The notes beneath the pieces are model-generated. The model made no database searches. It saw nothing but the letters and a program-made list of their open reading frames with translations, and was not told the origin of the DNA. The position numbers were made by a program, and so were the translations under genes. DNA of 64,000 bases, from NCBI GenBank assembly GCA_001179505.1, contig CDMY01000332.1, positions 1 to 64,000 on the forward strand, in the 5' to 3' direction. Shown here piece after piece: positions 15,977 to 64,000 of the stretch; position 1 is the first letter of the stretch, and each line of letters begins with the position of its first letter. The stretch comes from Vitrella brassicaformis CCMP3155 (lineage: Eukaryota; Protista; Chromerida).

Positions 15977-18577
15977 ATGGTCATTCTGACTTGGAAATGG
16001 AGGAGGAAGGCCACATGCGCAATGTGCCTCGTGGGATGGCTCTGTCGCCTGCTGACGACGCCCATCTCGGCGCATGGGCGTGCATCTTCGCCTCTGGGCT
16101 TCGTCGCAACGACAGGCGGCCGGCCGACCAGGTGGCCGAGGCGGGAGCAGATGAGGAAGCTGATCTACAGGCGGAGATCTGCCGCTGCCATGACCACAGA
16201 CCGGCCCAGAAGACAAGCACATCAGGTGAGAAAGATGGGACAGACAGACAGACGCGTGTACATCACATCCATACCAAAAGGCTTTCACTGTGTCTGTCTG
16301 TTTGTCTGTGTGTTGTCTGTTCTTCTGTGTGTGTGCTGTGGCTGGACAGTCCCCACCGGTGGTCGACAAGAGCAACCGTCGAGCGATGCTCGAAGCGCTG
16401 ATGTCATCCTCTCTGGCCGTCACGGCAGCACTCATGGCCATGCAGCCCACAGCCGCATCAGCGGCATCAGCACAGGCCTCGGGCGAGCTCCTCACCTCTT
16501 CCTCATCGAACAGCGACAAGGATGTGTGTGTATCGTCGGCCGAGTCTGCCTGCCCCTTCATCTGTGAGCAACCACACACGCATCAGACCAGGCAGGCATG
16601 AGCATTCTCCTTGCGAGTGACACATCGCTCTTTCTCTTCTTCTCCATGATTGTGCAGCTATGGAGGAGCTGAATGAGATCAGTCGGCTGGCCGCTGCGGA
16701 GGTGCGGCGTGCGCCGAAGGGCATCGAGGCCGTCGAGCAGCCGCTCCCTGAGTTCTTCCCCGAGCTGACGAGTGAGGGCATGACCTGGCGCAAGGTCTTC
16801 GACTCGGTCAAGGGGGCCGACGTGCTCTACGTGGCCTCCGACACCTACTCTCCCTCCTTCGTCACATACATGGCGCGGTTCCTCCTAAACTACGATGACA
16901 CGTGTGCTGCCTGGTGGCGGCAGCAGCGGCTCACCACACAGGCCGTGGCGGACCCCTCTGAGCGGACCAGGATTCTGCTCAAGAGTTTTGGGGAGTTCTC
17001 GTCGTCTGTCGAGTATGGCTTGCGGCGTTACCGGGGCCAGGCGGGTGTCAACAACCTGCTCAACGTCATGATCCGGCGGTACGGTAACCGGCAGATCCCC
17101 GAGTCGCGACGGCAGCTGGCCCTCCTCTTCTCCCTACTCAGCCAGTACCAGCCCATCAACGCTATCACGGTCAGTCAGCGAGGGAGGCTCTCATGCATCC
17201 ATCGTGCGTCTGGTGTCTTGTTCATCATGCGTGCGTGACTGCAGGTGCTGTCCCGTGCCCTCCCGACCCGTCCAACGTTCGCCTTCTCGCCCTCCCCCGC
17301 GGGCATCCCCTCGCCGGTTTTTGCCAGCATGAAGGAGGAGGAGGGCTTCTTCCTCTCAGACCCAGTCGCGCTGCTCCCCGGAGGCGTCAACCCCATCTTC
17401 GACCTCGAGCTGCAGCGGTATCGTGTGAGCGGCCTGCTGGCCGACCCCAAGATGCTCCTCAGCTACCAGCTGCGCCGTGACGGCTCCGTCAACCTGGACC
17501 AGCCTGTCCTGACGCTGTTTGGGCCGCGGGGGCCCTTCCCCGTGACTCGCGAGAAGCCGCTTGACTGGTCGACCTACGCACTGTTCGCCACTGCTGGTGC
17601 GTTTGCGTGTTCGGCGACGCACGCAGCCGTGATCCCCCTGGATGTGGTCAAGACGAAGCGGCAGACCGACCCGGAACGATTTGACTCTATGGGTCTGATG
17701 CAGGGCGCCATCACCCTGGGGAAAGAGGAGGGCTGGCGCATGCTGCTGCAGGGGGCCCAGGCCACCATCCTGGGCTACCTCTGGTACGGCATCACGGTGT
17801 ACCCTGGCTATGAGTTCTTCAAGCGGCTGTTCGCTTCGCTGGCCGGCCCTGCGGGTGCCATCGAGTTCCGAGTGCCGCTGGTGCTGATGGCCGGTGCGGT
17901 GGCGACGGTCTTCGCTGCTGTGGGCGTCTGTCCGTGTGAGGCGGTGCGCATCCGGATGGTGGCTGACCCCAATTACGCCTCGGGGTTCCTCCCCGCCGTC
18001 CAGCGGCTGACCCGAGAGGACGGCCTGTTGAAGCTCTATGACGGCTTCTGGCCGCTGCTCATCCGGCAGGTGGTCTTTGGCATGATGAAGTTCTTTGTGT
18101 TCGACTCGTTTGCTGAGTTCCTCTTCGATGTGTTTCCGGCATTGGACGACACCACGGCCATGAGCCTGTCTGTGTCGGCCTTCTCGGGGCTGGTGGCCGG
18201 GGTGGCCAGCTCGATTGTGTCGCAGCCGGCCGACACGATTTTGTCGCGCATCAACCAGAGAGGCGGGAGGGAGAGCGCCTTTGAGGTGGTGAGGGACATT
18301 TTTGACAAGTGGGGGCCGCAGGGCTTCTTCTTTGGCCTCGGCAGCCGCTGCGTGTGGGCGGGGTCCATCATCGCCGGACAGTTCTTCCTCTATGACGTCC
18401 TCAAGGCTTCCTTTGGCGTCAGGAATGAAGACCTCATGCTGTCAGTGAGAGACACACTCACACACACACACGCACACGCAGTATCTCGTTCTCGCGTCTG
18501 CTCCTGTGTGTTGTGATTGATGTGTTGTGTTATGTGATGTCAGGTTCATGGATGTGCTGTCGGGGCTGCCGCAGTGA
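15977..18577 (+). CDS. Mitochondrial-carrier-family (phosphate carrier-like) protein with long N-terminal extension and probable plastid targeting; exons 15977-16225, 16350-16563, 16658-17169, 17245-18440, 18544-18577
   Basis: Three PX[DE]XX[KR]X[KR]-type signatures (PLDVVKTKRQ, PCEAVRIRMV, PADTILSRIN). PiC-like RQVVFGMMKF and GLGSR...GQFFLYD. The N-terminus has a hydrophobic signal, a GFV motif and an R/T/A-rich transit-like region. The start codon is inferred. Confidence 0.88.
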
Positions 18578-19335
18578 GTGAGAGGTCTGTACACACATGG
18601 CGTGGCGGCCACCGAGTGAATGCAATGCAGTGCGTGCTGTGGAGTGAGTGAATGAATGACGTACAGATTGTGGTGTGGTAGTGGGGTGGGTCCCGGGGGG
18701 GAAAGGGGGTGGTGGGGTGCAGCTGGTCGGATCATGAGTGAATGAATGAGGCTGAGTTGGTCATGTGTGAGTTTGTTGACGATGAACGGCTGCACGGGTG
18801 TGCATTCACTCATTGTGTTGTGTTTGGGGGGTGGGGTGGGGTGGCGTGGGATGGAGGGGGAGTGTCTGGCAACGATGTGCGCCGGACGGACAGACAGACA
18901 GACAGAGAGGCATAGAAATGAATAATGACAGCGATTGATGAGGGCATCCACGCACTCTGGTCCATACAGCACCAATCATGCGTACAGCCAACACACACAA
19001 CACATGCATCACTGTATCTGTCAGAGCAGACAGGCAGGCGGGCAATCTGATGGAATGAATGTGTCTGAGGCAGGCAGCACACGACAAGGGTGGCATATTA
19101 CACCACATCCTTGCAGACGGGCACATCCATGCAGGCGGGCACGGCAGTCAGGAGGGCAGTAAGGGGACATCAGGGAAGAGATGGGATCGATACATCCGCG
19201 TGTAAAAACGAAAAGACTTCTCCGTCTGTGGTCTTAGACCACCCCCCCCAGAGCATGATACACACCACCACGACAGACACCAAGCCAAACGAGCAGCAGG
19301 CAAACAAACAAGACAGACACACGATCGCGGTGGAT
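18500..19335. repeat. Direct duplication copy 1 (carrier last intron end + last exon + downstream ~800 bp)
   Basis: Aligns by eye with 27720-28612, e.g. tcaggttcatggatgtgctgtcggggctgccgcagtga and gcaggcagcacacgacaagggtggcatattacaccacatcc... are shared. Confidence 0.92.
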
Positions 19336-19813
19336 GAGAGCAGACATCCTGCTCCCAGACTCCTCCACCCATATGGCCCATACGGAGGGCAAACCGTTAA
19401 TGCTCTACCTGGTGGAAAACCGCTCTCTCTGTACGCTTCGAAGCCTATCCGATGCCAGTCGTATACGTAGTCACTATGCGCATGAGATCAGTGTCTATCT
19501 CTCCTCTGTATGTATGTATGCATGTGGTGAGCATGAATGGTGTAATGACGGGGTTGGCTGACGGGTGAGTCGTCCATTACATAATAGACCGCTCTGGTTC
19601 GTCTGTATGTCCGCTGCACACGTATGTGCACACCACCACACACACACACACACCACACGCACACAGACGTCCCGGCCGATCGTCATGTGCAATGTCTAGC
19701 CCAGGGTGCTTATCGATAGATATGCAGGCATGGCTATGTAGAAGCTAGATAGACAGGTGTATAAATGGACGATGGAAGGACACCATTTCAATAATCGTCA
19801 CGTGTCTAATTAG

Positions 19814-20952
19814 TCAGTCGTTTCTCGCCAGACGGGCCATGTACTCTTGAAGCTCATCAAACAGACGTGGCTCACTGCCATCAGTCCGCCCATTGCTCTC
19901 ATATCGGTCAATCAGGACGGCAGTGGCCAGTGCCTTCATGTCTCGAACGTCTCTTGTCAGCTCGGCCAACTCCTGCCTCATCTCACTTATCGCTGCCTGC
20001 ACGTCAGCTGCCTGGCTCTCCTGCGCCTCTATCCTCTCCGCCACGTGTTGGGTGGCGTGTATGGTCTTGTACAGCACGGTGGGCAGGTTGACGTACAGCG
20101 CCTTGTTGTCGTGGCCGCGGTCAACGCTGCTCTCGAACACCGCCTCAGGCCAAACACTTCTCACTTCCTCCGCCAGGACGCCTGACAGACAGGCAGATAG
20201 GCCCACTAAGCTCTCTTTGCTCATCAGGCGATAGGCGTCACTGACCAAATTGCCGCTGTCCTGCGTAAGGGATGCGTCTTCCCCTGTGCGTCTCATCCTG
20301 CGTTCTTCCGTCGTCGTTTTTCCATTGGAAGCTGTAGAAGTCAATCTTCTTGATGGCTTCCATCGCTGCCATTCCCCCCTGGGCAGTCTCCTTGCTGACG
20401 CGTGTCTTGTACCTGCCGTCGCTCAGCGCGCCATAGAACTGGCTGAAGAGGCCTCCAGCGTATATCTCGTACAGAGGAAAGTCAGTACCACACCCCAACA
20501 TGCCTGCAGACACACGGACACACACAACCAGCCATGTGTACTCCGTGTGCACTTTATTTGGTGATGCAGGCGCCCTCACCGTATCCCTGCAGGAGCGCAT
20601 TGTCAGCTTGCAGGTCGGCAGCCCCAAGAGATGGGTCGTCCCCTGAAGCCTCAGGCAGCACACGCACGCAATGAGCACACATACATCAAGCACGGGGAAT
20701 CGTTCGCCTACCGCACTGGAAGGTGGCGTATTGCCGCAGTGCGGCTCCTGTGCTGTTGTTGACGGCGGGCGCGCCGATGAGACCCTCCTTCGTGGGTGGC
20801 ACGTTGCCACCAGTGGGCTTCGAGAGCTCATCGATCTTCTCGCTTGGGGGTGGGAAAGGGAAAAGCTGTGGTGGGTTCGCCGCTGCTCGACGAGCCCAGC
20901 AACTTGATGCGACGAGGACGAAAAGTTGACACAGCTGCGAAGCTGCGAGCAT
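19814..20952 (-). CDS. Secreted protein with Peptidase S74 / intramolecular chaperone auto-cleavage domain and C-terminal coiled coil; exons 20952-20712, 20642-20580, 20503-20246, 20181-19814 (309 aa)
   Basis: Signal peptide MLAASQLCQLFVLVASSCWARRAAA. GMLGCGTDFPLYEIYAGG resembles tail-fibre G.VGIGT..P repeats. AL-SDGRYK..(MEAIKKIDFYSFQWK)..RQFGVLAEEVRSVWPEAV..LYVNLPTVLYKTIHATQHVAERIEAQE matches the SDxRxK...GxIAQEV..V.PEAV...coiled-coil pattern. Exon lengths sum to 930 nt with consistent phases. Confidence 0.82.
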
Positions 20953-20984
20953 CGTAGCGTACAGCCGTTCATTGTACACGTGTG

Positions 20985-21395
20985 GTCTTAGACCACCCCC
21001 CCCAGAGCATGATACACACCACCACGACAGACACCAAGCCAAACGAGCAGCAGGCAAACAAACAAGACAGACACACGATCGCGGTGGATGTTCACAGACC
21101 CTCAGTGATCTCACGCGCCATCCACCCCATCAGCAGCAGCGGTTTCAGGGAGCATCCTAGGTGGCCTGACGGCCAAGTCCCCTGTCGGTCTGTCCAACAT
21201 GAAACAGGCACCCTAACATGCAACCCGGACACGAAACACGCAGCACGCAGAGGGCAGATGCAGCAGACAGGAGGATATGCAATGCATAGGGCAGACCGTT
21301 AGCGGTTAGGTAAAACCGTTTTCTTCCCTCTTTTCTCCTGCCTGTCGTCTACGTAATCACTGTGCGCATGAGATCAGTGTCTATCTCTCCTCCGT
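20985..21395. repeat. Third, interrupted copy of the 19229-19505 segment, lying in the divergent promoter of the cassette
   Basis: gtggtcttagaccaccccccccagagcatg...cacgatcgcggtggatg is identical to 19229-19338. tcactgtgcgcatgagatcagtgtctatctctcctc matches ~19470-19505. Confidence 0.88.
21136..21154 (+). promoter_or_regulatory. Candidate telo-box-like promoter motif (GCAGCGGTTTCAGGGAGCA)
   Basis: Perfect 19-nt match to 28771-28789 (minus strand) and a 13-nt core match at 2648-2660. All three lie just upstream of start codons. Confidence 0.4.
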
Positions 21396-21396
21396 G

Positions 21397-24300
21397 ATGC
21401 CGAGTCGATTTAGATTGACTCTCGTGAGCACGTGCCTCTTCGCATTTCTACGCGCATGGCTTCTTGAACTTCGCGTGGCCGTCGACGCACAGTTCACAGC
21501 CGCCTGCGTATTTGGCAACAATCGCAAAGCAGAGGGAGCCACGAGAACAGCTTCAGCGGGACTGCCTTCCCGGTGGGTTAGTGAAGCACCGACATAAAAC
21601 GGGACATGCGTGTGTGTCGTTGTATGCGTGTGTGTGTGTGTGTGTCATTACAGAGGTGCCGCCGGCTGGCCTGAAGCTGTCGACGTGTTCCCCACACCCC
21701 CTGCTGTACTTCAGAGATGACGAAGGCGAAGAGAGGGCTTTGGGGCAGTGCGTGGCTGGTAAGTGAAGTCACGAACCGCTTCATTCACATCCCTATGTCT
21801 TCCCTTTGCAGAGGATGACCTGAAGAGACGACTGCGAACAGCACAGAAGAACGCCCTCGGTGTTCCTGTGAGCGCTACTGGGGAGGGCATTCTCTGCGGT
21901 GCTGTGGATGGCAACGGCGGCACGGCTGCTCTTTCTGTCTGCCCGCCGGACCGACCAATCTGTGCACGCTCCAGCGACCAGCGCTTCTGCTTCTGCCTTG
22001 CTGATGAAACAGGCGCGAAGAGCCACAATGCCACATCCAATCCCAACAATTGCATGTGCATTTGCTAATGGTGAGCTGAGTCGTCAGCCCGAAGGCACTC
22101 CATCGCTGGTCAGAGGCGTTCTTCAAGGCCAGCCATCCTCTCTCTGTTTCCCGCCTTCCCTCGACCCCTGCATCAACCCAGTCAATCCCTTCGCGCCCAA
22201 CCTCGACTGCTACGATGCTCTCGAGGTCGTGGAGATTGCCGACACGAGCGGCGTCGACCCTGCATCGCTCGCAATGGGCGACCACAACAAGAACCCAAGA
22301 GCGTTTTCGCAACTCGTGCCTGGGACTTATCTGATGGAAGACGTCAAGTCGGATGCTTGGGCGGATGCGATTGAGAATGTGGGCGACACGGACAGCTGCC
22401 TGCGCATCCAGGGAAGAATGGAGGACTCCGACGAGGACTTCTCCATCGATCTGTCATGCAACACGACTGAGGGTGTGTCTGCCATCCTCCCTTTCGACTG
22501 TCCTGACGTGGGCCTCTGCTCGGTGCGAGATGGCAACGTATTCAAACCTGCACTCGTAAGTGGGAGACATGATGGAGAGAAGAGATGGGTCGGCACCATC
22601 TTCATGCGCCTGATGCGCGTGCGTCGATTGCCTGATGTGTGTGCGTCGATCAGCTTGTGATTCAGGGCGTGTTGAAGGTGGTCAACGCCAGTGAGGCCGA
22701 CTGCGTCGGCCTTGAGGCGCAGATCGAGCTGACAGCGTGAATGCAAAGACAGCCTGAGGCATTCATAGGGCTCACTGCATGTTTCTTGCCTGTGTCTCTG
22801 TTTGTGTGCAGCACCGGATTGGTCGATGAAGCGATCTCTGGTCGAGCTCGCTCCGCCAACTACACAGCCGAGCAGCGAATCACGATCTTTGCTGAAGGAG
22901 AAGAGACAGAGCTCATTACCACACGTGGCATTGCTCTGGTCAGTCCAGCCGCCAACTCTGACTTGGGGCTGCTCACGTTTCCCAGCACGGTGCCCGCCGG
23001 CTGCCCTTCCCTGCTCAAGCAGCGCATCTTCACGATCACATCGGGCGACGTGGCGGCAGGCGGGGTGATCGCGGCCACTGCATCCGGATACAGTTACGAT
23101 CAGAACGACACTGTAGTCTCAAAGGTAAACACGTAGAAGCGAGGGACAGCACCTGCATTGCGATCCCCTTTCTGGTTTTGTCTGCTGCATGCAGAAAGTG
23201 TTTGAGGTCGAGATAGGCTCTGGCAAGTCTGCCGATTTCAACGAGGTCTGCCGCGAGGCGGCTGAAGAGGATCGCATTTCCGCAGAGCAGGAGCGGCTGG
23301 TGACTGAGCAAGCGGCGATAGGTGTGGACCCTTCTCGTGCATTGGTCGGCATCGAGGCACCCTCTCTGTGGTTCCCGCTTTTCAAGACAGGCCCAAGCCC
23401 GTTCTTCCCCCTGTTCAATGCGCGAAGGGTGGCACGCTATTCGGTGACCAGGGAATTTAACCCCGATGAGATTGCGGACGAGTTCGGCGTTACTGACCGA
23501 GACCGAGAGCAGTCGAAGATCTTCTTGTGGAGAAGAGTGTTTGATTTCATATCTGTTCAAGCCGACATCAGTCGGCCTATAAGCTATGTCCAGATCTTAT
23601 GTGCCGAGAACGTGACGGTTCTACCGGTGACATTCAAGCTGGAGAATCTGGAGACGGGCAGCTCTCTCGATCTCATCCTCAAGGCACAACTGGGCTCCTT
23701 ACTCGACCAGGATGCAGGCGGTGAGACAGAGAAAACACCCTTCTGGAGCCATCCGTTTGCAATCGTTTTTTTTGTTTGTTCATGCTCAGTTTATGTTGAG
23801 TGCCGACGCCGTGTGCTGCAGACTCTCCCAGTTGGCTTCGCCGACACATATCAAATCCCTGGCGGCCTCACAGCAGGCTCGATCGCTGCTGTTGGAGTCG
23901 ATCCTAAGGTGTGGGCGCTCGGAGACAACGTGTTCGTGGACGTGCTGATCAAAGACGGAGAAGGTGGATCCACCACGACGTCACTGAGAGATGAGGGGAT
24001 TGTTGCTAATCTCCAACAGCACAACTGCATCGGTGTGACAGAGACCAAGCAGAGAGAAATCAGCGCGACGGTGTTGGTGTACGAGAGACAAGAGGAGGGC
24101 AATCGGGCCAGCGAGGAGGTCATCTTGGACACGACCTGCGAGATCGGCTTCGAATGCTTTGCAGCGTGTCCCGAGCCCAGGTTGCCGGTCTCCAGCCCCG
24201 CGGCAGTGCAGAATAGGACGTATCAGCTTCTCGATGCACCCTTCAGAACTGCAACGTCAGAGTGGACTATTACATCTGGCACAATGGAACCAGCTCGTTA

Positions 24301-27426: not shown

Positions 27427-27719
27427 GTGGGCGACACACGCACATGCAATTATACATGTATGTGAGGAGAGCTGTGGGCTATGGACTGTGGTGCTGTATG
27501 CGCGTAGTGGCGCCACCTGCGTCAGTCAATGCACCTGTTCTCAGACACAATAGATCTATGCTCAGACCTCCCCCTGTCGTCCACCCAACCAAATGTCGTT
27601 CACATACATGGATTGACGAAGGTATGGAGTCCATCAAGCCATACAGTGACAACCATACCTTACCGAGAACCACTCTCGCCTCTCTCTTTCTCTCTCTCTC
27701 TCTGTCTGTGTGTGTGTGT

Positions 27720-28612
27720 TGTGATTGATGTGTTGTGCTGTGTGGTGTCAGGTTCATGGATGTGCTGTCGGGGCTGCCGCAGTGATGGAATGGCACACAC
27801 ATGACGGACGGCCACCGAGTGAATGCGATGCATGCCGTTCCGTTCCGTGCCGTGCTGTGCTGTGGAGTGAGTGAATGACGTACTCATAAGTACAACCAAT
27901 ACATCATTAAATGTGGTGTGGTAGTGGAAGGGGAGGGGGTGGGCTGGTGGGTGTGCAGCTTGTCGGCTCGTGAGTGAATCAATCGATAAGCCTGAGTCCC
28001 GTGCGTGTGTGGGTGGGTGAATGCAATGCAATGCAATGTGTGAGTTTGTTGAGGATGGACGTGCAAGATGGCTGGATGGCTGCGAGGCTACACCACCTGG
28101 GTGTGCATTCAGTCTTGGTGTTTGGGGAGTGTCTGGCAAGGATGGACGCCGGACAAAAGACAGACAGACAGATAGACAGACAGAGACAGAGACAGAGGCA
28201 TTGACAGGGATGATTGATGAAGGCATCCACGCAGTTCTGGTCCGTCCGTACAGCGCCAACCATGCGCACAGCCAGCCAACACACACAACACATGCATCAC
28301 TGTATCAGTCAGAGCAGACAGGCAGCCGGGCAATCTGATGGAATGAATGTGTCTGAGGCAGGCAGCACACGACAAGGGTGGCATATTACACCACATCCTT
28401 GCAGACGGGCACATCCATGCAGGCGGGCACGGCAGTCAGGAGGGCAGTAAGGGGACATCAGGGAAGATATGGGATCGATGCATCCGCGTGTAAAAACGAA
28501 AAGACTTCTCCGTCTGTGGTCTTAGACCACCCCCCCAGAGCATGATACACACCACCACGACAGACACCAAGCCAAACGAGCTGCAGGCAAACAAACAAGA
28601 CAGACACACGAT
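27720..28612. repeat. Direct duplication copy 2, including an orphan copy of the carrier terminal exon (FMDVLSGLPQ*)
   Basis: Matches 18500-19335 with substitutions and microsatellite length changes. No upstream carrier exons precede it. Confidence 0.92.
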
Positions 28613-35041: not shown

Positions 35042-36330
35042 TTAGTAGCCCATGTTGTGTCGCACGTCCCGCGCCGTGTCTGTGATGCGCAGCCGCCCCA
35101 GTATGCACCGCAGCTCGTGCAACACCGCTGTTTCGATGCCATGCTCGAGCGGGTTGTCATCGGGCGGTGGCGGCAGGGGGTGGGCGGCCAGGAGGGGGGC
35201 AATGATGTGGTTGAGCTCCTTGTTGGTCAGGTCATACTGCTGTGGCACCTGCCCCCCGTTGGCCTGGCTCACGCGGAGCCCGAAGAGGGCACAGCGGTTC
35301 GTGTAGAGGTAGTGGCGCTCGGCAACCTCTGCAGTGTTCTGGCACTGACACGCACACACACACAGTGAGACACACAATTGTGTCATTCAAGTGTCATTGT
35401 CCCTGCTCATTGCCCGTGGTCTGTGTGTGTGTGTGTGTGTGTCTGACGGATGGCGATGATTTGCTGGAATAGCAGCTGCTTGAAGTTGTTGTCCATCCGA
35501 CGCGCCCTATTGACCAGCCTGGTGGTCTCTGCCCGTCTCTGCTGGGCCGTCATGCCACTGTCGTAGAGGTGACGATTCACCCCCCTCATCGCCGACGATT
35601 CACCCCCCTCATCGCCGCCCGTTGCGCATTGTTGAGCCCAAACACCTGCCGGAAGAAGAACCTCCTCGGCACCTGGGTGTCTGGGCCCTGCGCCATCCTA
35701 ATGAAGAGCACCCCGCCAAGGTAACGCCACATGATCTTGCGCGTCCCCTGGGCGAGCTGTGGCTGGCGGGGCAGGGCAGCGATGATGAGGCGGGCGATGG
35801 GCACACCGACGCAGCAGAACCACACGTATAAACGAGAGCGCAGCTCTGATAGACAGTGTTGTGTGTGACGACTGTTGTGTGTCCCATCCATAAGTGGAGA
35901 CCTACCATGGCAGGGTTGCGGCCGCCATACGTGGCATATCGCGTTGATAAATATCCGCTCATAACTGACCAAGCAACAAAAGCCATGCGCAAAATGTGTC
36001 AATCTCTGGGCAATGAGCTTCTTGAGTGCATACTTCCATTGCGCATCTTGTCCGATTGTGTTGCCGTTGGCCTGCAAGTAGTCGACTATGTCCATCACGT
36101 AGTGGGCCAGGATGATGGTAACGTGCTGCATGCAGACCGGCAAAAAGGGAAGAACACACATCAATAAGTCAAGCATGAAAGACATGGCGCATTGGATCAT
36201 CCATCCATCTGATAAGTGACGCTCAATGACCGGGCATCGTGACGCTGTGTGGGCGAGGGCGACAGCTGTTGAGCTCTACGGTATCAGCAAGAGCGACAAA
36301 GGATGGAGAGTAGGTCACCAAGAAGAATGG
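35042..36330 (-). pseudogene. Disrupted gene: in-frame TAG in the first exon plus a 23-bp frameshifting tandem duplication
   Basis: Frame HPLSLLLIP*SSTAVALAHTASRCP|HVTIILAHYVMDIVDYLQ... runs to RAAMRGVNRRR*, while the shifted frame resumes MRGVNRHLYDSG. The duplication is at 35571-35616. Confidence 0.6.
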
Positions 36331-36627: not shown

Positions 36628-37460
36628 CTAAGGCGTTGACTGTTTTCTGATGTCACTGACAAGCCTCTCTCCGAGCGCTGACAAAGACGACAGTAAATGA
36701 AGTCTGCATGCTGGAATGAAGAACCTCATACAGGGTGGAACAAATACTGAGCGCTGGATGAGGGATGTGAAGGCCTCATTGTCCTTTCTCGTGGCATAGA
36801 GGCGTTCCACAAGTTGAGGGTCTTCGGCGAGTGCGATAGCAAGCTGGTCGTACTCGCCGTTGCCGTATTCGGAGGTCGATTTTACCACATGAAGCACTGT
36901 CTTGAGCCTGTCGCTTGTCCCGCTCGTGTCGCTTTCGCTCGGCATCATCACCAAGGTGTCATGCCCTCCCCCTTGGCCCGTACTTGGTGCGAGATGAAAT
37001 TGTGCAGCTCCTGGTTCGTCTCCTCGTATCGCTGCATCACCGTCCGGAGGGTGGCGGGGTGCAGGTCCTGTTCCGGATGGCGGGCTAGGCTGGGCGGCAG
37101 TGGTGTCAAGTCTTCCTCCTCTTCTAGTGGGCCAGGATGATGGTGAGTTGCTGCATGAGAGACCGGCACAAAGGCACACACGAGAGACTGCCTGAATAAG
37201 TGGATAAGTGACGCTCGATGACTGACCTCATTGGTGTGGTGGTGCCTAGCACTGAAGTCTATCAGATGCCCATAAATCTCCCTATGATCAGGAAACAGCA
37301 GCCAGCGACCGCAATCGGCATCGCGCCCTCATGCGTCTTGCATCCGGCAGCGGACCGGCCATATGTGACGCTGTGTGGGCGAGGGCGACAGCTGTTGAGC
37401 TCACGAGTGTCAGCAAGAGCGATAAAGGATGGAATAGGTCACCAGAGGGATGATGCCGAA
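36628..37460 (-). pseudogene. Diverged paralog of the 35-36.3 kb locus sharing only the 5' module; probably decayed
   Basis: 37125-37450 aligns with 36100-36330 (gtgacgctgtgtgggcgagggcgacagctgttgagctc; gtgggccaggatgatggt). It has an ~150-nt insertion and TAG where the paralog has TAC. Confidence 0.45.
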
Positions 37461-37825: not shown

Positions 37826-40474
37826 TCAAGGGTACTCGCGGAACTCGACCGAGTCCGACCGGTAGATGGTGGGCGGCAGCTGCCACGAGTTGCCCGGTTC
37901 CCAGTAGATGTCCAGATGTCTGGCAACAAGCACGGACAGCAACACATCCATCCATCCATCCATTCACTCATTCGTCCATGGAAGTGTGTGTGTCGTCTTA
38001 CGCGTAGATGTCGGGCTTGTATGTCACGTAGGACATGGGCGAGATGCAGTTGAGAGTCTGTGGCGTGGCAGTGGCACCTCCACGTCCCCCCTTCCACAGG
38101 GGCGCGAGCCCCTTGGCGCGCAGGTCGTTGAGCACACGATGGACGTCTTTCTGGTCCGTGAAGTCCCTCGTGTGCACACCGAGCATGTACAGGCGGCGAC
38201 CTCGGTCGTCCTCCTTGGGCTCGACGGTGTGCTTGGCAGCTGGGCCGAGCTTCCCCTCGCTGTGCAAATCGATCGCGCGAGCACAGGCCGTGCGCAGGTT
38301 GTTCTCTCCATCTGGGAGAGGGCAACAACAGAAACGTATCCACATATGTCATCGCATCAGACAGATGCACTTTTCTTGAGGTGCAGCCAGGCCAGCTCGT
38401 CTGTCCGACCAAAATGGAGCATCCATTTGCCGGCCACGCACCCCATCTCGGCCGCCAGCTGGAGGAGCCTCTCCTTGATGACGGTGTTCTTGCCGCCGTG
38501 CGCTTGGTCCGTCAGAATCTGCAGACCCCTCGACTGGATCTTGGCAATGTCATAGTGATTCTCTCCCGTCGGCTCGTTCCACAGATAGTGATACTGAGTG
38601 TCGCGCTTGTGTTTGGCGCCTTGAGATGGCTGGCCAGCGGGCGGGTGCGATGGATGGGGAGGGCAGGATGGAGCGCGCCTCTTCTCGGTCTCTCGAGACA
38701 ACGCTGAGCACAAACCACAAACATCACACAAGACCACACCACACCCATGACACCACATCCATCCATCCACCCACCCGCCGCCCAGGTACCTGAGTGCTTG
38801 ATGCCCGCCTTCTGCTGCTGCTGCTGCTGCTGCTGCTGATGGGTGCGGTCAGCCCCAGCGTTGATCTCCCTCATCAGCTGCATCGCCAGGGCGTGGTCGG
38901 CTTCCTCCTGGCGCTTGCGGCAAAGCTCTTCGTCCGTCATGGAGGCATCCAGGTCCATGGCGGTGGGCTGGGAGGGACCTGCCGGCGCTGCGGCCGCTGC
39001 AGCAGATGCCGATGCGCTCACGCCGGATGAGGTGGCGCCGGCTGTGGTCTTGGCGGCCTTGGCCTGCTTCTCGCCCTCCTCCTTGCGCTTCAGGTACTCC
39101 TCGTCTGTGAAGTCGTTGGAGCTGTACTGCGTCACGGGCGACAGGCGCAGATCCGCCCACGTGCCTGTGTTGCCAGAATACACGTCCAAAATCCTGATCA
39201 ACCAACCAATACACACACATGCGCAGCGCACAGAGAGGGAGGGAGAGCGCACAAAGCACAGCACAGCACAGCACAGCACGTGAGTGAGTCGGTATATGCG
39301 GTGCATGGGTTCCTGCTGGCTGCCGTACGTACGTCAGCAGATCGAGCTTGTAGCGGACTCGTTTGTTGCCCCTGAACTCCTCACCACCACCGCCGCCGCC
39401 CTGCTGCTGCTGCTGCTGCTGGTGGTCATCTCCAGGCGTCCCGTCGGCCACCACACCGATCTTGCGGAGGCCGTTGAGGACGCGCTTGACCTCCTGCCGG
39501 TCGCGGAAGTCGGGACTGTACACACAGATGACGTACATGGGGCCGCTGGGCCTCAGGGCGCACTTGGAGCAGTTGCCCAGCTGCCCCTGGCTGGTCGCCA
39601 ACGCCACACGACGCCACGCCTCATCTATCATGTCATCACCTGCAGTGCAATGCATGCATGCATCAGCATCACACGGACGCACGGACGGACGGACGGACGG
39701 ACGGACGGACGGCAACACCACAAGACACAGTAAGTAACGTCCATCAATGCATTGCAAAGAGGCCTTCCTTCCTTGCTTCCTTCCTTGCCTCCTTGCTTCT
39801 GTCTTTCCTTCTCACCCACCGAAGTAGAGGAGCCACTTGCCGGTGACGCACTTGGTGTCGATGGCCAACTGCGTCAGTCGCTCCAGGGTCTCCTTGCGAA
39901 TCACCCCCCTCTTGGCCCCGGGCTGCTTGAGCTTCTCGCGACAATCGAGCAGAATGGCCTCGCCTCTGGCCTCGATGGCCTTGACCTCCTGCTCCGAGAA
40001 CTCAGGCTCAGGCTGGCCGCCGTCATGCCGCACCAACCGCCACCTGCCACGCAGCGTCTCGTGCACCTGATGGCTGGCGCGTGTGCTGCTGGGGTTGGCC
40101 AAGGGCAGATGCGATGAATGGTTGCCCCTGGTCGGGGGGGGTCGGGCCTGCTGCTGCTGCTGCTGATGGGTGCGGTCAGCCCCAGCGTTGATCTCGCCCG
40201 ACAGCTGCATCGCCAGGGCGTGGTCGGCTTCCTCCTGGCGCTTGCGGCAACGCTCCTCGTCCGTCATGGAGGCATCCAGGTCCCTGGCGGCGGGCTGGGA
40301 GGGACCTGCCGGCGCTGCGGCCGCTGCAGCAGATGCCGATGCGCTCACGCCGGATGAGGTGGCGCCGGCTGTGGTCTTGGCGGCCTTGGCCTGCTTCTCG
40401 CCCTCCTCCTTGCGCTTCAGGTACTCCTCCTTTCTGCGCTTGCGGATCTCAGCCAGCTGAGATTCTGAATCCAT
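37826..40474 (-). CDS. Protein with two DUF1917/UPF0696 (C11orf68-like, eIF4E-like fold) domains; exons 40474-39820, 39639-39333, 39193-38790, 38703-38371, 38311-38002, 37919-37826
   Basis: Domain 1: CVTGKWLLYFG..EAWRRVA..GQLG..KC..YVICVYSPDFRDRQEVKRVL..RYKLDLLTILDVYSGN. Domain 2: CVAGKWMLHF..GKLG..LGVHTRDFTDQKDVHRVL..TYKPDIYAHLDIY..NSWQLPPTIY. All exons join in frame. Confidence 0.85.
38822..40429. repeat. Near-identical ~280-bp internal repeat (38822-39102 and 40148-40429)
   Basis: Both copies encode EEYLKRKEEGEKQAKAAKTTAGATSSGVSASASAAAAAAPAGPSQP...EEADHALAMQL..EINAGADRTHQQQQQ with only a handful of substitutions. Confidence 0.95.
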
Positions 40475-59623: not shown

Positions 59624-62600
59624 ATGGATCCCGCTTCGCCTGATGCTGAGGCCGCCACGACACAATGCTCAGACTATGAGCACTTCCTCACTCAGTACGT
59701 GAGCACACCCGACTGCTGCACACAGAGAATAGCGGGTTAGAAGCCACGGAGAGCTTTTCTGCCTTGTTCTGTCGCTTCCTTTACTGCAGGAGCCCAAATC
59801 AGCCCCTCTGGGAAGGCCCGGTAGGCTCGCTGCAGTGTCTGAGTTGCAAAGGCACCCTGAGATGTGGCAGGCAGGCCCAAGTCAATGTGTCTGTGTGTCT
59901 GTGTGGCTGCAGAAACCGGTCGCATCCTCCCAAGAGAGAGAGCCCATATCGCTGGTCGTCTACTCACAGCAGACCCACACCGACTCCAGCACAGAGTCGC
60001 CCGCCACCAACAGCCAAGGCGACGCCGAGCGGTCCTTCTCCACCCTCCTGCACACACAGACGGACGGTGGCGATGTCGATGACCAAGGCGTATCTGCCAG
60101 CAGCTGTGGTGGCACTGCGGGGGTCAGGAAGGGCGGGCGTCGGAGGAACAACGGCGGTGAGCGGGAGGGGTCCTATGTGGAGGGGTATGGATCGGAGGGC
60201 GACGGCAGCGAGTGGCGGGAAAAGGAGGGGGTCGTGGGGGCTGACCACCACCTGCAGCAGCAGCAGCTCCTGAGGGCGCGTGCTGCAGGTAGGGACGGAC
60301 GGACGTCGGCATCCATACAATTATGCCTGGGTGTGTGGTGGGTGCATATGGTATGGTGGTATCAGGGCGTGGTTTGGGCAGGGGCCTTTCTCGACAGGTA
60401 CGCCTACAGGCACACGAGAGAACCAGAGGACCACACGCACACATCACACGGATGGACGGCCTGCCTGCCTGCCTGCCACTCTGTGTGGGTGGGGGGTTAG
60501 GTCGGTCCCCCTCCGTTGTCGCGTCGCCCCTCGTCGACGAACGTGCCCCCCGCGATGCCTGGCGCCGCTGAGGTGCTCAAGGCTGGCCAGGGGACCAAGA
60601 TAATAGTAGACGCCCGCAAGCCTGTTTTCTCTCAAGGTGATATGTGGATCGACAGACACCAGCACGTCGTGTGCTGTGTCCATGTGTCCATGTGGCTGGT
60701 TGTGGCTGTGCAGACCACTTCCCGCCTCTCAACGCAGCGTTGAATCGGTCACCGACGAAAAAGTCAGCGACCGACGATGGGTGGGCCTTCGTGCCTTGCG
60801 AGAACCCTTCCCTCCCTCCCTCCGTCCTTTGGTCTTGTTGGTGTGCAGCTGTCCCGCTCGTGTGTCGTCTCCCGTCGGCGACGGCAAGTGCCCCCTGCCG
60901 CACGCCGCCCTGCCCCTTAACAAGCGCATGGCGCATCCTCATGGGGACGAGCAGCCCCCACCTGACTACGATGTGCGTGAACACCCGCGGGACTCGGACA
61001 GACAGACAGCCTCACTGACGGTTACGGCGAGTGGTTTTTTTCTGTGTGTGCGCGCGCATATAGGAGGTGGGCAGTGGGGGCAGCAGCACGCCCCGGCCAT
61101 CACTGGCCAAGGGCTCTGTGTGGGAACGGAGGAAGCACCACCACCAGAACCAATACCAACACCAGCATAACCAGCGGCGACAGGAGCAGCAGGCGCCACA
61201 GGGCGTGCAGGCGTTTCCCCGTCGGAGTGCGTTGGATCCCGTCTCGCCCACGCACAAGAGCGACCAAGGCGCCACAGACACGGCAGACGCATCAGCTCAC
61301 GAGTAACCCCGCACTCACACGCACACACACAGAGGGGGAGAGGCTTTGGTGGGTGGTGGTCTTGTTGTCTTCCGTCCACCTGTCGATCTGTCTGTCTGTC
61401 TGTCTGAGTGTGTGCAGGAGGCCCCCTCCATCCGGCGGCGAGCCACAGGCTGCCCCCGACCTGGAGAGGCTGCTCATCAACTTGGCCCACCCCTCCCGCC
61501 CCACCAGCGCCGCCCAATCCGAGATGACCACCTGCAGCCACTCCTCTCACGCCACCCGACACACCCCCGCCAGCACCACCACCAGCAGCGACAAACACAA
61601 CAACAGGCGCCATCCCGGTGACTCTGCCGACCCCTACGCATCGCAGTCGTCCACACCCATGTCTCGCTCGTCGGGGCGGGACGGCTCGCCAGCCGCTGGT
61701 GGCACTGGGACGTTCCGGCACCCCCGTGCAAACGGCAATGGCATTGTCGTCAATGGCTGGCCCCCTGGCAGTGTGAGCAGCAGCGACTGGACGGCTGGTG
61801 CGAGAGGCAGCCTGAGGAGGGGGCCATCACCAGCACCATCAGCATCAGCAGCAGTCAACGGTCATGGTGCCGATGGAAGTGGGTTAGAGTGGCGGACGCG
61901 GCAGCCCGACGAGGGCCCCACGGCCAGATGGGACATTCCTCCCCCCCGGGGCCGAGGAGGGCGCCGGCCGCCCTCCATGCACAGAGGAGGGAGTGGGGGT
62001 GCTTATGCTCCCTACCGGTACCCACGCCCCCGCCCGCCGCCTTATCAGTCGCTCGCGCACACGCACATCCCGGATCAGCCGCTGCGGCAGGAGTGGCGCC
62101 CCACTTCAAGCAAGGCGGCACAGCAAGAGGAGAATGGTGGTGGTCCTGACGGTGTGGGTGGTGGGGATGGTGAGAGCGTGAGTGCTCCGTGCACGCCGCG
62201 GGCTGGCCCACGGGGCGCTGGGCGGGATGGCCACCACGGGGGTGGGCGAGGCCACGGGTGTGCGCCGCCTGAGCCGAAGCCGATATCGTATTGGTATAGG
62301 GAGCAGCCCGTGGGGTCGCTGGCGCATTGTGGGGTGTTCCAGCACCTGAGTGCCGAGGTAGACCAGTTCGTCGCGTCGGTCGACCACCATATCAAAACAA
62401 AGGTAGACGGGGGGAGGTGCGCTGGACAAACACTCACACACACATGGATGGATGGATGTGTGTTGTGTGTGTCCGGTGTGGTGATATTTACTGTAGGAGG
62501 GGGCGCGGCGGGAGCAGATGCTTTGTGTGCTGAGGGCACTCATATTGGCCTTCTTCGAAGAGAACCGCAAAAAGTGAGAAGCTCACCGCAGGCACAGAAC

Positions 62601-64000
62601 CAAGCGAGCCACCGTGTGGCCCCCGTGTGTGTGTCCTCCATCCCTCCATTCTCTCTCCCAACGACCACCAGATATCGCAGGGCACAGGCGGACCAGCCGA
62701 TAGGTGTGGAGGTGTTCGGGTCGTACAGCACCAACCTGTTCCTGCCCACCTCCGACATCGACCTGGCCATCGTCAACGTGGAGCTGCCGGCCGCCGACCC
62801 CCACCCTCTGGCATATGACTTCACACAGGAGCTCCTCCTCAGCATCGCAGAGTGGATCGACGTACGACACACACACACACACACACATGGATGGATGGAT
62901 GTGTGTGTGTGTGTGGTGTGTGTGTTCAGCCGCGCTCGGCTCACAACGAGCGGGACCATCCCGAGCTGCATGAGTGGATCAGTGGGGTGCAGTTCATCCC
63001 AGCCAAGACCCCACTGCTGACGGTGAGGACCACCACGAGCGTCGAGGGCCACACTACGCAGATCGACATATCGGTGGTGACGGGAAAGCACCACGGCATA
63101 CAGACGGCCAAACTCGTCCAGGTCAGCTGACTTGAGCTGAGGAATCACGCAATTCATCTCTCTCTCTCTGTGTGTCTGTCTGTCTGTCTGTGTCTGTCAG
63201 CGATATTGCGAGGGGCTGCCGACTCTGCGGCCGCTGGTGTTGGTGCTGAAGCACCTGCTGAGCCAACGGGGGATGAACAAGCCGTTCGAGGGCGGCCTGT
63301 CGTCATACGCCCTCACTCTCATGGCAATCGCATTCCTGCAGACACCCCAGCTCTACAACAACGCCCACACAGACGTCGGTAAGTCAGTAACTCACTAAGG
63401 GCCACCTGACTGCTGACTGCTGCACTGCACTTGAACCAGCCATACCAACCATTTGCACACCAGACCACACCTTTGCTATGTGTGTGCTGTGCAGGCCAGC
63501 AGCTGTGCAGTCTGTGTGCCTTCTACGGCGGTGTGGCGGTGCCGTCCGGTGCGCATCTGCTGGTGCCCAAGCATATCAACGGCCTCGGCCAAATCGTTCC
63601 GGTCACTTTCTTCGACTACAAGTACAGAAGACCCTCCATCCATCCATCCATGCATCCATCCATCCATGTGTATCTGCATGCATGTGTGTGTGTGTGTCCC
63701 TCCCGTCAGTTTGCTGGGCATCAGTGTGCGGCCGCCCCACGAGCAGCAGCAGCAGCAGCAGGGCCAGCACCACGAGCGGCCGCCCGCCTTGTTCTCCCTG
63801 GTGCCGTTCAATGGGCCCCTGGACGGCTCGCGGCTGTGCGTCGAGGACCCCATGGACCGCACAAACAACGTCGGCAGAACCGCATTCAACATTTCTGAGA
63901 TACAGGTCAGTGAGTGAGTGCGGTGTGAGCGGATGGACGCAGGCCTGACGCCTGTGAGTGACCATGGCGTCGTCTGTGTGTGTGTGTGTGTGTGTGTGCA
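59624..64000 (+). CDS. TRF4: TRF4/TENT4-like non-canonical poly(A) polymerase with long disordered N-terminus; 3' end beyond the window, 5' exon structure uncertain
   Basis: VEVFGSYSTNLFLPTSDIDL, AKTPLL, QIDISV, LRPLVLVLKHLLSQRGMNKPFEGGLSSYAL and LCVEDPMDRTNNVGRTAFNI match the Pol-beta nucleotidyltransferase plus PAP-associated domain. Confidence 0.9.

What the first reader, a model, noticed from the sequence alone, without database searches (positions are those of the whole stretch)
19814..20952. Secreted eukaryotic protein with a phage tailspike-type S74 self-cleaving chaperone
After removing three introns, the 309-aa protein has a signal peptide, a short tail-fibre-like segment (GMLGCGTDFPLYEIYAGG), an intact Ser-x4-Lys dyad (S~129-DGRY-K~134; codons 20423-20421 and 20408-20406), the GVLAEEV..VWPEAV motif and a coiled coil. 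Such domains trimerise beta-helical tailspikes (for example endosialidase) and the transcription factor MYRF, then cut themselves off. A small secreted version would release only ~100 aa of trimeric passenger. The ORF track hides it because the domain is split across two frames by a 64-nt intron (20182-20245).
Basis: partly seen in the sequence, partly recalled or inferred. Interest (0 to 1): 0.85.

Follow-up and report, generated by a model that had tools for sequence, protein, structure and literature searches.

The report
Algal secreted protein with self-cleaving S74 domain
This is a real, expressed, intron-containing gene of the alga Vitrella brassicaformis that encodes a small protein, probably secreted, ending in the self-cleaving trimerisation domain known from phage tail fibres and the animal factor MYRF; databases already label the domain, but nobody has studied the protein.

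Summary
The minus-strand model has four exons and three GT..AG introns of 69, 76 and 64 nt. It gives 930 nt, or 309 aa, identical to a deposited Vitrella brassicaformis CCMP3155 protein. Two independent transcript assemblies have all three introns removed at exactly the predicted junctions.

The spliced protein hits Pfam PF13884 (Peptidase_S74) at 41.1 bits against a cutoff of 22. S129, D130, R132 and K134 fall in invariant columns of an alignment with 37 relatives. AlphaFold models match only intramolecular-chaperone (ICA) domains in the PDB: MyRF, phage GA-1, endosialidase and T5.

The N-terminus is the only hydrophobic segment and looks like a signal peptide. There is no DNA-binding domain and no transmembrane segment, so this is not a MYRF.

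A 431-aa Vitrella paralogue (44% identity) has a textbook signal peptide, a ~200-aa Pro/Thr-rich region, the same pre-cleavage module and the same intron position. Frameshifted transcribed copies also exist. Neighbouring genes are ordinary cellular ones, and no close viral or bacterial relative was found.

Secretion, trimerisation and cleavage at L128|S129 are inferred, not shown. UniRef already names the protein a Peptidase S74 domain protein. I rate this a new member of a known kind, of moderate interest.

The parts
20953..21241 (-). 5' UTR as far as transcript contig L001 reaches. It has no intron, contains several upstream ATGs (including an out-of-frame one at 20972) and includes one copy of the 119-nt direct repeat.
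20712..20952 (-). Exon 1 (CDS): Met1 through the first base of the G81 codon. It holds the predicted signal peptide (residues 1-20, 20893-20952), a Pro-rich linker and the start of the module conserved with the paralogue.
20643..20711 (-). Intron 1, 69 nt, GT..AG, absent from transcripts.
20580..20642 (-). Exon 2, 63 nt (residues 81-102).
20504..20579 (-). Intron 2, 76 nt, GT..AG, absent from transcripts.
20246..20503 (-). Exon 3. It holds the tail-fibre-type pre-cleavage motif (residues 102-128, 20424-20503) and the first three quarters of the S74 domain.
20406..20423 (-). Catalytic motif S129-D-G-R-Y-K134. Ser is at 20423-20421 and Lys at 20408-20406. The predicted scissile bond is L128|S129.
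   Evidence: the Ser-Lys dyad is defined in PMC8326128 and PMC3742443
20182..20245 (-). Intron 3, 64 nt, GT..AG, phase 1 inside the codon of the invariant G188. It is absent from transcripts, and the paralogue P0003 gene has an intron at the same position.
19814..20181 (-). Exon 4 (CDS and stop). It holds the end of the S74 domain (GVLAEEV..WPEAV..ALYVNLP), the long C-terminal helix (residues 222-284, 20080-19892) and the C-terminal tail. The stop codon is at 19816-19814.
19262..19813 (-). 3' UTR, at least as far as transcript contig L002 reaches. It includes the second copy of the direct repeat.
19227..19345 (.). Direct repeat, copy 1 (in the 3' UTR). It is the end of a longer repeat at 18505-19336 that recurs at 27713-28612.
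20981..21099 (.). Direct repeat, copy 2 (in the 5' UTR, 29 nt upstream of the ATG), 97-100% identical to copy 1.

Best explanation
The locus is a genuine, transcribed and spliced nuclear gene of the chromerid alga Vitrella brassicaformis.

Domain layout of the 309-aa product:
- an N-terminal signal peptide (about residues 1-20);
- a passenger of about 108 aa (residues 21-128) with no known domain, which ends in the G-x-x-G-x-G-T-x-x-P motif typical of tail-fibre stalks;
- a complete intramolecular-chaperone auto-processing (ICA, Peptidase S74) domain, residues 129 to about 221;
- the domain's C-terminal coiled-coil helix, residues 222-284.

Most likely mechanism, by homology with endosialidase and MYRF. 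The chain enters the ER. Three chains are brought together by the C-terminal coiled coil and the ICA beta-ring. The short upstream stalk folds as a trimer. The Ser129-Lys134 dyad then cuts the L128-S129 bond. This yields a small N-terminal trimer and a separate 181-aa ICA trimer.

The paralogue carries a ~200-aa Pro/Thr/Asp-rich, mucin-like passenger in front of the same module. This suggests the family makes extracellular, probably glycosylated, trimeric surface or wall fibrils. The S74 domain would then serve as a removable C-terminal trimerisation propeptide, working like the collagen C-propeptide.

Shown here: gene structure, splicing, expression, domain identity, conserved catalytic residues, fold similarity, cellular genomic context and the paralogue family. 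Inferred: ER import and secretion, trimerisation, cleavage and the role of the passenger.
For: Gene and expression:
- The gene model equals the deposited protein.
- Two transcript assemblies are spliced at all three junctions.
- The protein cluster is also present in MMETSP and EukProt sources.

Domain:
- PF13884 scores 41.1 bits against a cutoff of 22 and covers 57 of 58 profile positions.
- PHROGs matches fall on the C-terminal ends of tail-fibre families.
- S129, D130, R132, K134, G188, P199 and V202 are invariant in 38- and 36-sequence alignments.
- The profile of that alignment hits the MyRF ICA domain 7dc3 at 2e-23, plus phage and Bdellovibrio fibre structures.

Structure:
- The domain-only model has pLDDT 80.2.
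- The only Foldseek PDB hits with E<=1e-3 are chains of 7dc3. The next hits are 3gud, 3gw6 and 4uw8, all ICA domains.
- 167 viral models match at E<=1e-3. The 50 listed are phage tail-fibre, neck-appendage, baseplate or ICA/S74-domain proteins, plus one S74 protein of Micromonas pusilla virus SP1.

Secretory routing:
- The only hydrophobic segment is residues 1-20.
- Paralogue P0003 has a textbook signal peptide (MKFLRLVILAFLLVANVRA|Q).
- The two Cys of the mature part (C80, C106) are conserved in the paralogue, and an N-x-S/T sequon lies at residues 65-68.

Resident eukaryotic gene:
- It has three introns, the last at the same position in the 44%-identical paralogue.
- Neighbours encode a mitochondrial carrier, ATP-synt_C, DUF1997 and a WW-domain protein.
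- GC content is the same as the surrounding sequence.
Against: - No experiment or trimer model supports cleavage or trimerisation here.
- The passenger (residues 25-124) is modelled with pLDDT below 50, so its fold is unknown.
- Foldseek TM-scores are modest (0.45-0.51 to MyRF ICA), as expected for a monomer model of an intertwined trimer, but this is not strong evidence.
- The signal peptide lacks a basic n-region and was not scored with a dedicated predictor. In an alga with a four-membrane plastid, a signal peptide can also be the first half of a plastid-targeting sequence.
- The 5' UTR has several upstream ATGs, including one 20 nt before the start, so use of Met1 is not proven.
- The Vitrella domain is divergent. 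It has a 10-25-residue loop insertion after W162. phmmer finds no PDB sequence and tblastn finds no phage.
Confidence: 0.7

Rival explanations
1. Relic of an integrated virus. On this view the gene is a leftover fibre gene from a polinton-like virus, virophage or giant virus. It is still transcribed but has no host function, and it is on its way to decay like its frameshifted paralogues.
For: - S74 domains are reported as ubiquitous in polinton-like viruses integrated in protist genomes, usually at the C-terminus of fibre proteins (PMC12220804). They also occur in algal giant viruses.
- One of the BFVD matches is an S74 protein of Micromonas pusilla virus SP1.
- The Vitrella family includes transcribed copies with frame breaks, one with Arg at the catalytic Ser position.
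- The gene is bracketed by 119-nt near-identical direct repeats.
Against: - The 309-aa ORF is intact and all catalytic and invariant residues are kept.
- It has three spliceosomal introns. One sits at the same position as in a paralogue that has diverged to 44% identity, on another scaffold and among cellular genes, which argues for long residence and selection.
- No annotated gene within 10 kb has a viral Pfam domain.
- No relative was found in IMG/VR with the family's own motifs, and none in INPHARED phages.
- A viral or bacterial origin of the domain long ago remains possible and is compatible with the main explanation.
Confidence: 0.1
2. A permanent trimerisation module. The S74 domain folds and trimerises but does not cut, or cuts only conditionally. 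The full-length 30-kDa chain, with its unusually long coiled coil, would then be the functional secreted trimer.
For: - The C-terminal helix (63 residues) and the extra C-terminal helix at 293-306 are longer than in most relatives aligned. This suggests the C-terminal part has a role of its own.
- The Arg that stabilises the oxyanion in endosialidase comes from the upstream beta-helix (PMC8326128), and no equivalent could be identified here.
- The passenger is very short.
Against: - S129, D130, R132 and K134 are all retained with the canonical spacing.
- In MyRF the dyad is sufficient for cleavage without contacts from the stalk (PMC8326128).
- The one family copy that lost the Ser is also frameshifted, as expected if the Ser matters.
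Confidence: 0.1
3. Organelle-targeted rather than secreted. The N-terminal hydrophobic segment would be the first part of a bipartite plastid-targeting sequence, or an ER-retention route, so that the protein acts inside an endomembrane compartment.
For: - Vitrella has a complex plastid that is reached through the ER.
- The region after the predicted signal peptide (RRAAANPPQLFPF...) is basic, Ala/Pro-rich and poorly conserved.
Against: - The paralogue's signal peptide is followed directly by an acidic Pro/Thr-rich, mucin-like region. That is typical of extracellular glycoproteins and unlike a transit peptide.
- The conserved Cys pair and the sequon fit a lumenal or extracellular fate.
- No targeting predictor could be run.
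Confidence: 0.08
4. A MYRF-type membrane-bound transcription factor, or bacterial or phage contamination of the assembly.
For: MyRF ICA is the top structural hit. The nearest non-Vitrella sequence relatives are bacterial.
Against: - There is no NDT80/PhoG DNA-binding domain, no MRF C-terminal domains and no transmembrane segment after the ICA domain. An N-terminal signal peptide would put the whole chain in the lumen.
- phmmer finds no pairwise similarity to MyRF.
- Contamination is excluded by the introns, the spliced transcripts and the flanking eukaryotic genes on a 116-kb scaffold.
Confidence: 0.01

Closest known systems
ICA (Peptidase S74) domain of phage tailspikes and fibres: K1F endosialidase (3gw6), GA-1 neck appendage (3gud), T5 L-shaped fibre pb1 (4uw8)
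   Same: - It has the same Pfam family, the same S-D-x-R-x-K motif with Ser-x4-Lys spacing, and the same conserved G-[FV]-[IL]-A-[QE]-E-V..P-E-x-V block.
- The domain is C-terminal, follows a G-x-V-G-I-G-T-x-x-P stalk motif and ends in a C-terminal helix.
- These are the structural hits that follow MyRF in the Foldseek lists.
   Different: - The gene is in a eukaryotic nucleus with introns, not in a virus.
- The passenger is about 108 aa with no depolymerase or receptor-binding domain, against hundreds to thousands of residues in phage proteins.
- Pairwise similarity to phage sequences is below the tblastn threshold.
- A loop insertion follows W162, and the coiled coil is longer.
MYRF / MrfA, the only experimentally studied eukaryotic cellular protein with an ICA domain that I know of or found in these searches
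   Same: It is a eukaryotic cellular protein that uses the ICA domain. MyRF is the best structural match (7dc3, E about 1e-4, TM 0.45-0.51), and the Ser-Lys dyad is the same.
   Different: - It has no NDT80-type DNA-binding domain, no transmembrane anchor and no MRF_C domains.
- It has an N-terminal signal peptide instead of a cytosolic N-terminus.
- There is no specific sequence relationship.
- It is not a member of the MYRF family.
Bacterial chromosomal 'tail fiber domain-containing proteins' and Bdellovibrio fibre proteins (8ond, 8ojn, 8oml)
   Same: - They are the nearest non-Vitrella sequence relatives, at 27-33% identity over stalk motif, S74 domain and coiled coil.
- They are cell-encoded, and some are as small as 208-370 aa.
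   Different: They are prokaryotic and have no introns. Most have long repeat-rich passengers. The similarity is too low to name a donor.
Fibre proteins of polinton-like viruses and algal giant viruses that end in a C-terminal S74 domain
   Same: They occur inside protist genomes or in the viruses of protists, with the S74 domain at the C-terminus of a trimeric fibre (PMC12220804, PMC12906663, PMC13659346).
   Different: - Those proteins are large and modular (laminin-G, collagen or FhaB repeats) and sit in viral gene clusters.
- This gene is small, spliced and lies among cellular genes.
- No viral relative was found in IMG/VR.
Collagen C-propeptide (functional analogy only)
   Same: It is a C-terminal domain that nucleates trimerisation of a Pro-rich extracellular chain and is then removed. 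This fits the paralogue P0003 best.
   Different: There is no homology. The collagen propeptide is removed by a separate protease, not by itself. This comparison rests on my own general knowledge, not on a tool result.

Membership tests
Peptidase S74 / ICA domain (PF13884) | Match to the family HMM above the curated cutoff | tested here: met
   41.1 bits against a cutoff of 22, E 2.2e-10, residues 129-202, profile positions 1-57 of 58. Exon 3 alone gives 29.1 bits.
Peptidase S74 / ICA domain (PF13884) | Catalytic Ser-x4-Lys dyad at the start of the domain, equivalent to endoNF S911/K916 and MyRF S587/K592 | tested here: met
   S129 and K134 are invariant in alignments A1 and A3, together with D130 and R132. 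The codons were verified. The definition of the dyad comes from PMC8326128.
Peptidase S74 / ICA domain (PF13884) | ICA fold: a beta-strand ring followed by a C-terminal helix | tested here: met
   The AF2 domain model has pLDDT 80.2. The only PDB hits with E<=1e-3 are chains of MyRF ICA, followed by 3gud, 3gw6 and 4uw8. TM-scores are modest (0.43-0.51).
Peptidase S74 / ICA domain (PF13884) | C-terminal triple coiled coil that drives trimerisation | tested here: inconclusive
   There is a single long helix at 222-284 with pLDDT 87-97 and a clean heptad register. The oligomeric state cannot be modelled with the single-chain tool.
Peptidase S74 / ICA domain (PF13884) | Trimeric beta-helical or fibrous stalk immediately upstream of the cleavage site | tested here: inconclusive
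   The sequence motif is conserved: G105, P111 and G119 are at least 90% conserved in both alignments, and G107 in A1. The monomer model is low-confidence there.
Peptidase S74 / ICA domain (PF13884) | Autoproteolytic release of the domain after folding | not testable with these tools
   This needs expression of wild type against S129A or K134A mutants.
MYRF-type membrane-bound transcription factor | NDT80/PhoG-like DNA-binding domain N-terminal to the ICA domain | tested here: not met
   Pfam finds only PF13884 above threshold, and the N-terminal 128 aa have no domain hit.
MYRF-type membrane-bound transcription factor | Transmembrane segment C-terminal to the ICA domain (type II topology) | tested here: not met
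   The hydropathy scan finds a hydrophobic stretch only at residues 1-20.
Virion tail fibre or tailspike (phage, polinton-like virus, giant virus) | Encoded within a viral genome or an integrated viral element with hallmark genes | tested here: not met
   Genes within 10 kb on either side encode a mitochondrial carrier, ATP-synt_C, DUF1997 and WW-domain proteins, plus four products without a Pfam hit. The paralogue sits among glycosyl hydrolase, kinase and amylase genes.
Virion tail fibre or tailspike (phage, polinton-like virus, giant virus) | Long fibrous, receptor-binding or depolymerase passenger | tested here: not met
   The passenger is about 108 aa and has no domain.
Eukaryotic secretory-pathway protein | Cleavable N-terminal signal peptide | tested here: inconclusive
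   A hydrophobic h-region at residues 7-20 with small residues at -3/-1 (C-W-A) is read from the sequence, and the hydropathy scan supports it. The paralogue has a canonical signal peptide. No SignalP or TargetP was available.

The most novel reading that the evidence does not exclude
Chromerid algae may have domesticated a phage- or virus-type ICA domain as a self-removing trimerisation propeptide for their own extracellular proteins. This family would include a mucin-like fibril (the 431-aa paralogue) and a minimal ~100-aa trimer (this gene). It would be the first eukaryotic cellular use of the domain outside MYRF, and the first in the secretory or extracellular space. Alternatively, the released 181-aa ICA trimer with its unusually long coiled coil could itself be the functional product.
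Probability: 0.3. Interest if true: 0.6.

Novelty: new member of a known kind. Interest (0 to 1): 0.4.

Why it matters
The ICA/S74 domain is a textbook case of a viral module reused by cells. The only eukaryotic cellular example studied so far, as far as I know and as far as these searches show, is the transcription factor MYRF. There the domain works on the cytosolic face of the ER.

This Vitrella gene and its paralogue have an N-terminal signal peptide and no membrane anchor. If the signal peptide works as predicted, the domain has been recruited a second time in eukaryotes, with the opposite topology, apparently to build small secreted trimers.

If cleavage is confirmed, the protein would be a compact natural system of about 290 aa for studying trimerisation-dependent autoproteolysis. 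It would also point to unknown surface or wall components in the closest photosynthetic relatives of apicomplexan parasites.

The value is tempered in two ways. The domain call already exists in public databases. S74 domains are also common in viruses that integrate into protist genomes.

Tried and rejected
- phmmer of the protein against PDB sequences found nothing at E<=1. Only the alignment profile reached MyRF and the phage structures.
- Word-indexed homology searches with the exon-3 region and with the full protein returned only the protein itself and its 259-aa fragment.
- The exhaustive phmmer search gave only 43 hits at E<=1e-3. Apart from the query's own 259-aa fragment (P0001), the only close ones were Vitrella's own paralogue and fragments of frameshifted paralogous transcripts.
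- Cluster look-ups of 20 hits gave no taxonomy beyond Vitrella.
- Contexts of three distant hits were bacterial. This is too distant to name a donor.
- The profile search with A1 was flooded by long bacterial tail-fibre proteins and showed no eukaryotic relatives in the top 120. It therefore says nothing about how common such proteins are in other protists.
- The search for related loci failed with A1 because no stretch was conserved enough. With A2 on IMG/VR, 47 pattern matches were found but none was confirmed.
- tblastn of residues 95-260 against 50,697 phage genomes found no match.
- NCBIfam gave nothing relevant on the exon pieces.
- The weak CCP_MauG, MCPsignal and coiled-coil Pfam hits on exon 4 are below their cutoffs and fall on the long helix, so I treat them as coiled-coil noise.
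- A literature search for chromerid or dinoflagellate S74 proteins found no paper that combined the terms.
- An AlphaFold trimer, a signal-peptide or plastid-targeting predictor, and a phylogeny that includes MYRF and viral S74 domains could not be run with the tools and sequences on hand.
Full report
**What is in the sequence**

It has four exons: 20952-20712, 20642-20580, 20503-20246 and 20181-19814. They are separated by three GT..AG introns of 69, 76 and 64 nt. The CDS is 930 nt and encodes 309 aa plus a stop.

Exon 3 sits in the frame of ORF 20238-20972 and exon 4 in the frame of ORF 19814-20344. The 64-nt intron lies in phase 1, inside the codon of G188. The codons given for S129 (20423-20421) and K134 (20408-20406) are exact.

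**Identity of the locus, and cDNA evidence**

A homology search with the exon-3 region returned a 309-aa protein, P0002. It is deposited as an unnamed protein product of Vitrella brassicaformis CCMP3155 and named by UniRef 'Peptidase S74 domain-containing protein'. It is also present in MMETSP and EukProt sources. P0002 is identical to my spliced translation. The window carries the same numbering as scaffold CDMY01000332.1 of GCA_001179505.1.

A 259-aa fragment of the same protein (P0001) is encoded as one uninterrupted ORF on two JGI contigs, L001 and L002. Aligned to the window, both contigs break exactly at the three predicted junctions. They run on into a 5' UTR reaching 21241 and a 3' UTR reaching at least 19262. 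They are therefore spliced transcripts.

**The domain**

- Exon 3 alone hits PF13884 at 29.1 bits (cutoff 22), over profile positions 1-43 of 58.
- The spliced protein scores 41.1 bits, E 2.2e-10, over positions 1-57 of 58, at residues 129-202.
- PHROGs matches fall on the extreme C-termini of tail-fibre families.
- In alignments with 37 and 35 relatives from an exhaustive search, S129, D130, R132, K134, G188, P199 and V202 are invariant. G105, P111, G119, W162 and A191 are at least 90% conserved in both alignments, and G107 in A1.
- The Ser-x4-Lys spacing is the same as endosialidase S911/K916 and MyRF S587/K592, both of which are required for cleavage (PMC8326128; PMC3742443).
- The segment GMLGCGTDFPLYEIYAGG aligns with the family's pre-cleavage stalk motif G-x-V-G-I-G-T-x-x-P-x-Y-x-L-x-V-N-G.

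**Structure**

- The full-length monomer model has mean pLDDT 67.5. The signal-peptide helix, the S74 core and a 63-residue helix (222-284, pLDDT 87-97) are confident. Residues 25-124 score below 50.
- A domain-only model of residues 95-290 reaches pLDDT 80.2.
- For both models, the only PDB hits with E<=1e-3 are chains of the MyRF ICA crystal structure 7dc3 (TM 0.43-0.51). They are followed by GA-1 3gud, endosialidase 3gw6 and T5 4uw8, all ICA domains.
- 167 viral models match at E<=1e-3. The 50 listed are phage tail-fibre, neck-appendage, baseplate or ICA/S74-domain proteins, plus one S74 protein of Micromonas pusilla virus SP1.
- The long helix has one clean heptad register, with 12 of 17 a/d positions on V/I/L/M/A. 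This fits the triple coiled coil that drives trimerisation in MyRF.

**Topology**

The only hydrophobic stretch is residues 1-20, with C-W-A at positions -3 to -1. There is no later transmembrane segment, and no other Pfam domain is above threshold. The mature part has two Cys (C80 and C106) and one N-x-S/T site.

I could not run a signal-peptide or plastid-targeting predictor. ER entry is therefore an inference. It is strengthened by the paralogue described next.

**Family in Vitrella**

An exhaustive phmmer search of 1.84 billion representatives gave only 43 hits at E<=1e-3.

- The closest hit after the query's own 259-aa fragment (P0001) is P0003 (CEM12505.1, 431 aa, 44% identity), also from Vitrella but on another scaffold among cellular genes.
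- P0003 has a textbook signal peptide followed by about 200 aa rich in Thr, Pro, Gly and Asp. It then carries the same module, which is conserved from about 80 residues before the cleavage site through the S74 domain and includes both Cys.
- Its last intron interrupts the same F-G|V-L-A position as intron 3 here.
- Two further hits (P0004 and P0032) are fragments of Vitrella transcripts that are spliced but frame-broken. L005, L006 and L007 are identical in three independent assemblies and 70-85% identical in nucleotides to the window's exons and upstream region. They carry Arg at the catalytic Ser position.
- L004 carries a 3' fragment of a family member behind an unrelated 429-aa ORF.

The family therefore has two intact genes and at least two decayed, transcribed copies.

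**Origin**

- All other hits are about 27-33% identical. Where a genomic context could be read, they sit in bacterial genomes.
- A profile search returned bacterial 'tail fiber domain-containing proteins'.
- There is no pairwise similarity to MyRF or any other PDB chain. No tblastn hit appears in 50,697 phage genomes, and no confirmed relative appears in IMG/VR.
- The literature shows that S74 domains are ubiquitous at the C-termini of fibre proteins of polinton-like viruses integrated in protist genomes (PMC12220804). They also occur in prasinoviruses and Heterosigma akashiwo virus. An old viral or bacterial origin is therefore plausible.
- The gene now behaves as a resident nuclear gene. It has introns and host-like GC content. 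Its neighbours encode a mitochondrial carrier, an ATP-synthase c-type subunit, a DUF1997 protein and a WW-domain protein.
- The donor cannot be named from these data.

**Mechanism proposed**

The steps, in order:

1. Signal-peptide-directed ER entry.
2. Trimerisation nucleated by the coiled coil and the ICA ring.
3. Folding of the short upstream stalk.
4. Cleavage of L128|S129 by the Ser129-Lys134 dyad.
5. Release of an N-terminal trimer of about 108 aa per chain and a 181-aa ICA trimer.

The paralogue's mucin-like passenger suggests that the family builds extracellular trimeric surface or wall fibrils. The S74 domain would act as a self-removing trimerisation propeptide. All of these steps are inferred from homology and sequence features. 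None is demonstrated here.

**Comparison and verdict**

The protein meets the tested sequence and fold criteria of the S74/ICA family. It fails the defining features of MYRF: it has no DNA-binding domain and no C-terminal membrane anchor. It also fails those of virion fibres: it has no viral context and no long passenger.

It is best described as a eukaryotic, cell-encoded counterpart of the small bacterial S74-capped fibre proteins.

I score interest at 0.4 and rate the finding a new member of a known kind.

Noticed in passing
window 19227-19345 and 20981-21099; also 19453-19509 and 21339-21395: The S74 gene is bracketed by direct repeats of 119 nt (97-100% identical) and 57 nt (91%). One set lies in the 5' UTR, 29 nt upstream of the ATG, and the other in the 3' UTR. 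Independent transcript assemblies contain both copies, so the arrangement is real. It may mark a segmental duplication or an insertion event.
   Followed up: partly
window 18505-19336 and 27713-28612: An 830-900-nt non-coding repeat (78% identity) lies between the mitochondrial-carrier gene and the S74 gene and recurs 9 kb away. Its end is the 119-nt repeat above. The 3' part of transcript contig L001 matches the 28-kb copy better (98.9%) than the local one (96.9%), so L001 may be a chimeric assembly.
   Followed up: partly
L005:383-1201, L006, L007 (identical); L004:1727-2216: These are transcribed, spliced but frame-broken paralogues of the S74 gene in Vitrella. One has Arg in place of the catalytic Ser. 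The other is a 3' fragment lying behind an unrelated 429-aa ORF. Their genomic loci were not located.
   Followed up: partly
L003:6001-7446 (CDMY01000436.1): The intact paralogue P0003 (431 aa) has a signal peptide and a ~200-aa Thr/Pro/Gly/Asp-rich low-complexity region before the same pre-cleavage module and S74 domain. It lies next to a glycosyl hydrolase family 3 gene.
   Followed up: partly
window 20953-21241, minus strand: The 5' UTR is at least 290 nt long and has several upstream ATGs. One is an out-of-frame ATG at 20972, only 20 nt before the start codon, which opens the 244-aa mechanical ORF. This could affect translation of the S74 protein.
   Followed up: no
window 38821-39102 and 40148-40429; 36228-36320 and 37353-37444; 62426-62480 and 62869-62920: Further short direct repeats lie elsewhere in the window (97%, 89% and 91% identity). 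(CA)n/(TG)n microsatellites are frequent, for example at 18441-18485, 19629-19653 and 21621-21646.
   Followed up: no
window 15977-18577, plus strand: The neighbouring gene encodes a mitochondrial carrier protein. The single 423-aa ORF at 17245-18516 scores 145.7 bits for Mito_carr, and the annotated product is 734 aa. It ends within about 1.3 kb of the S74 gene's stop codon, tail to tail.
   Followed up: partly
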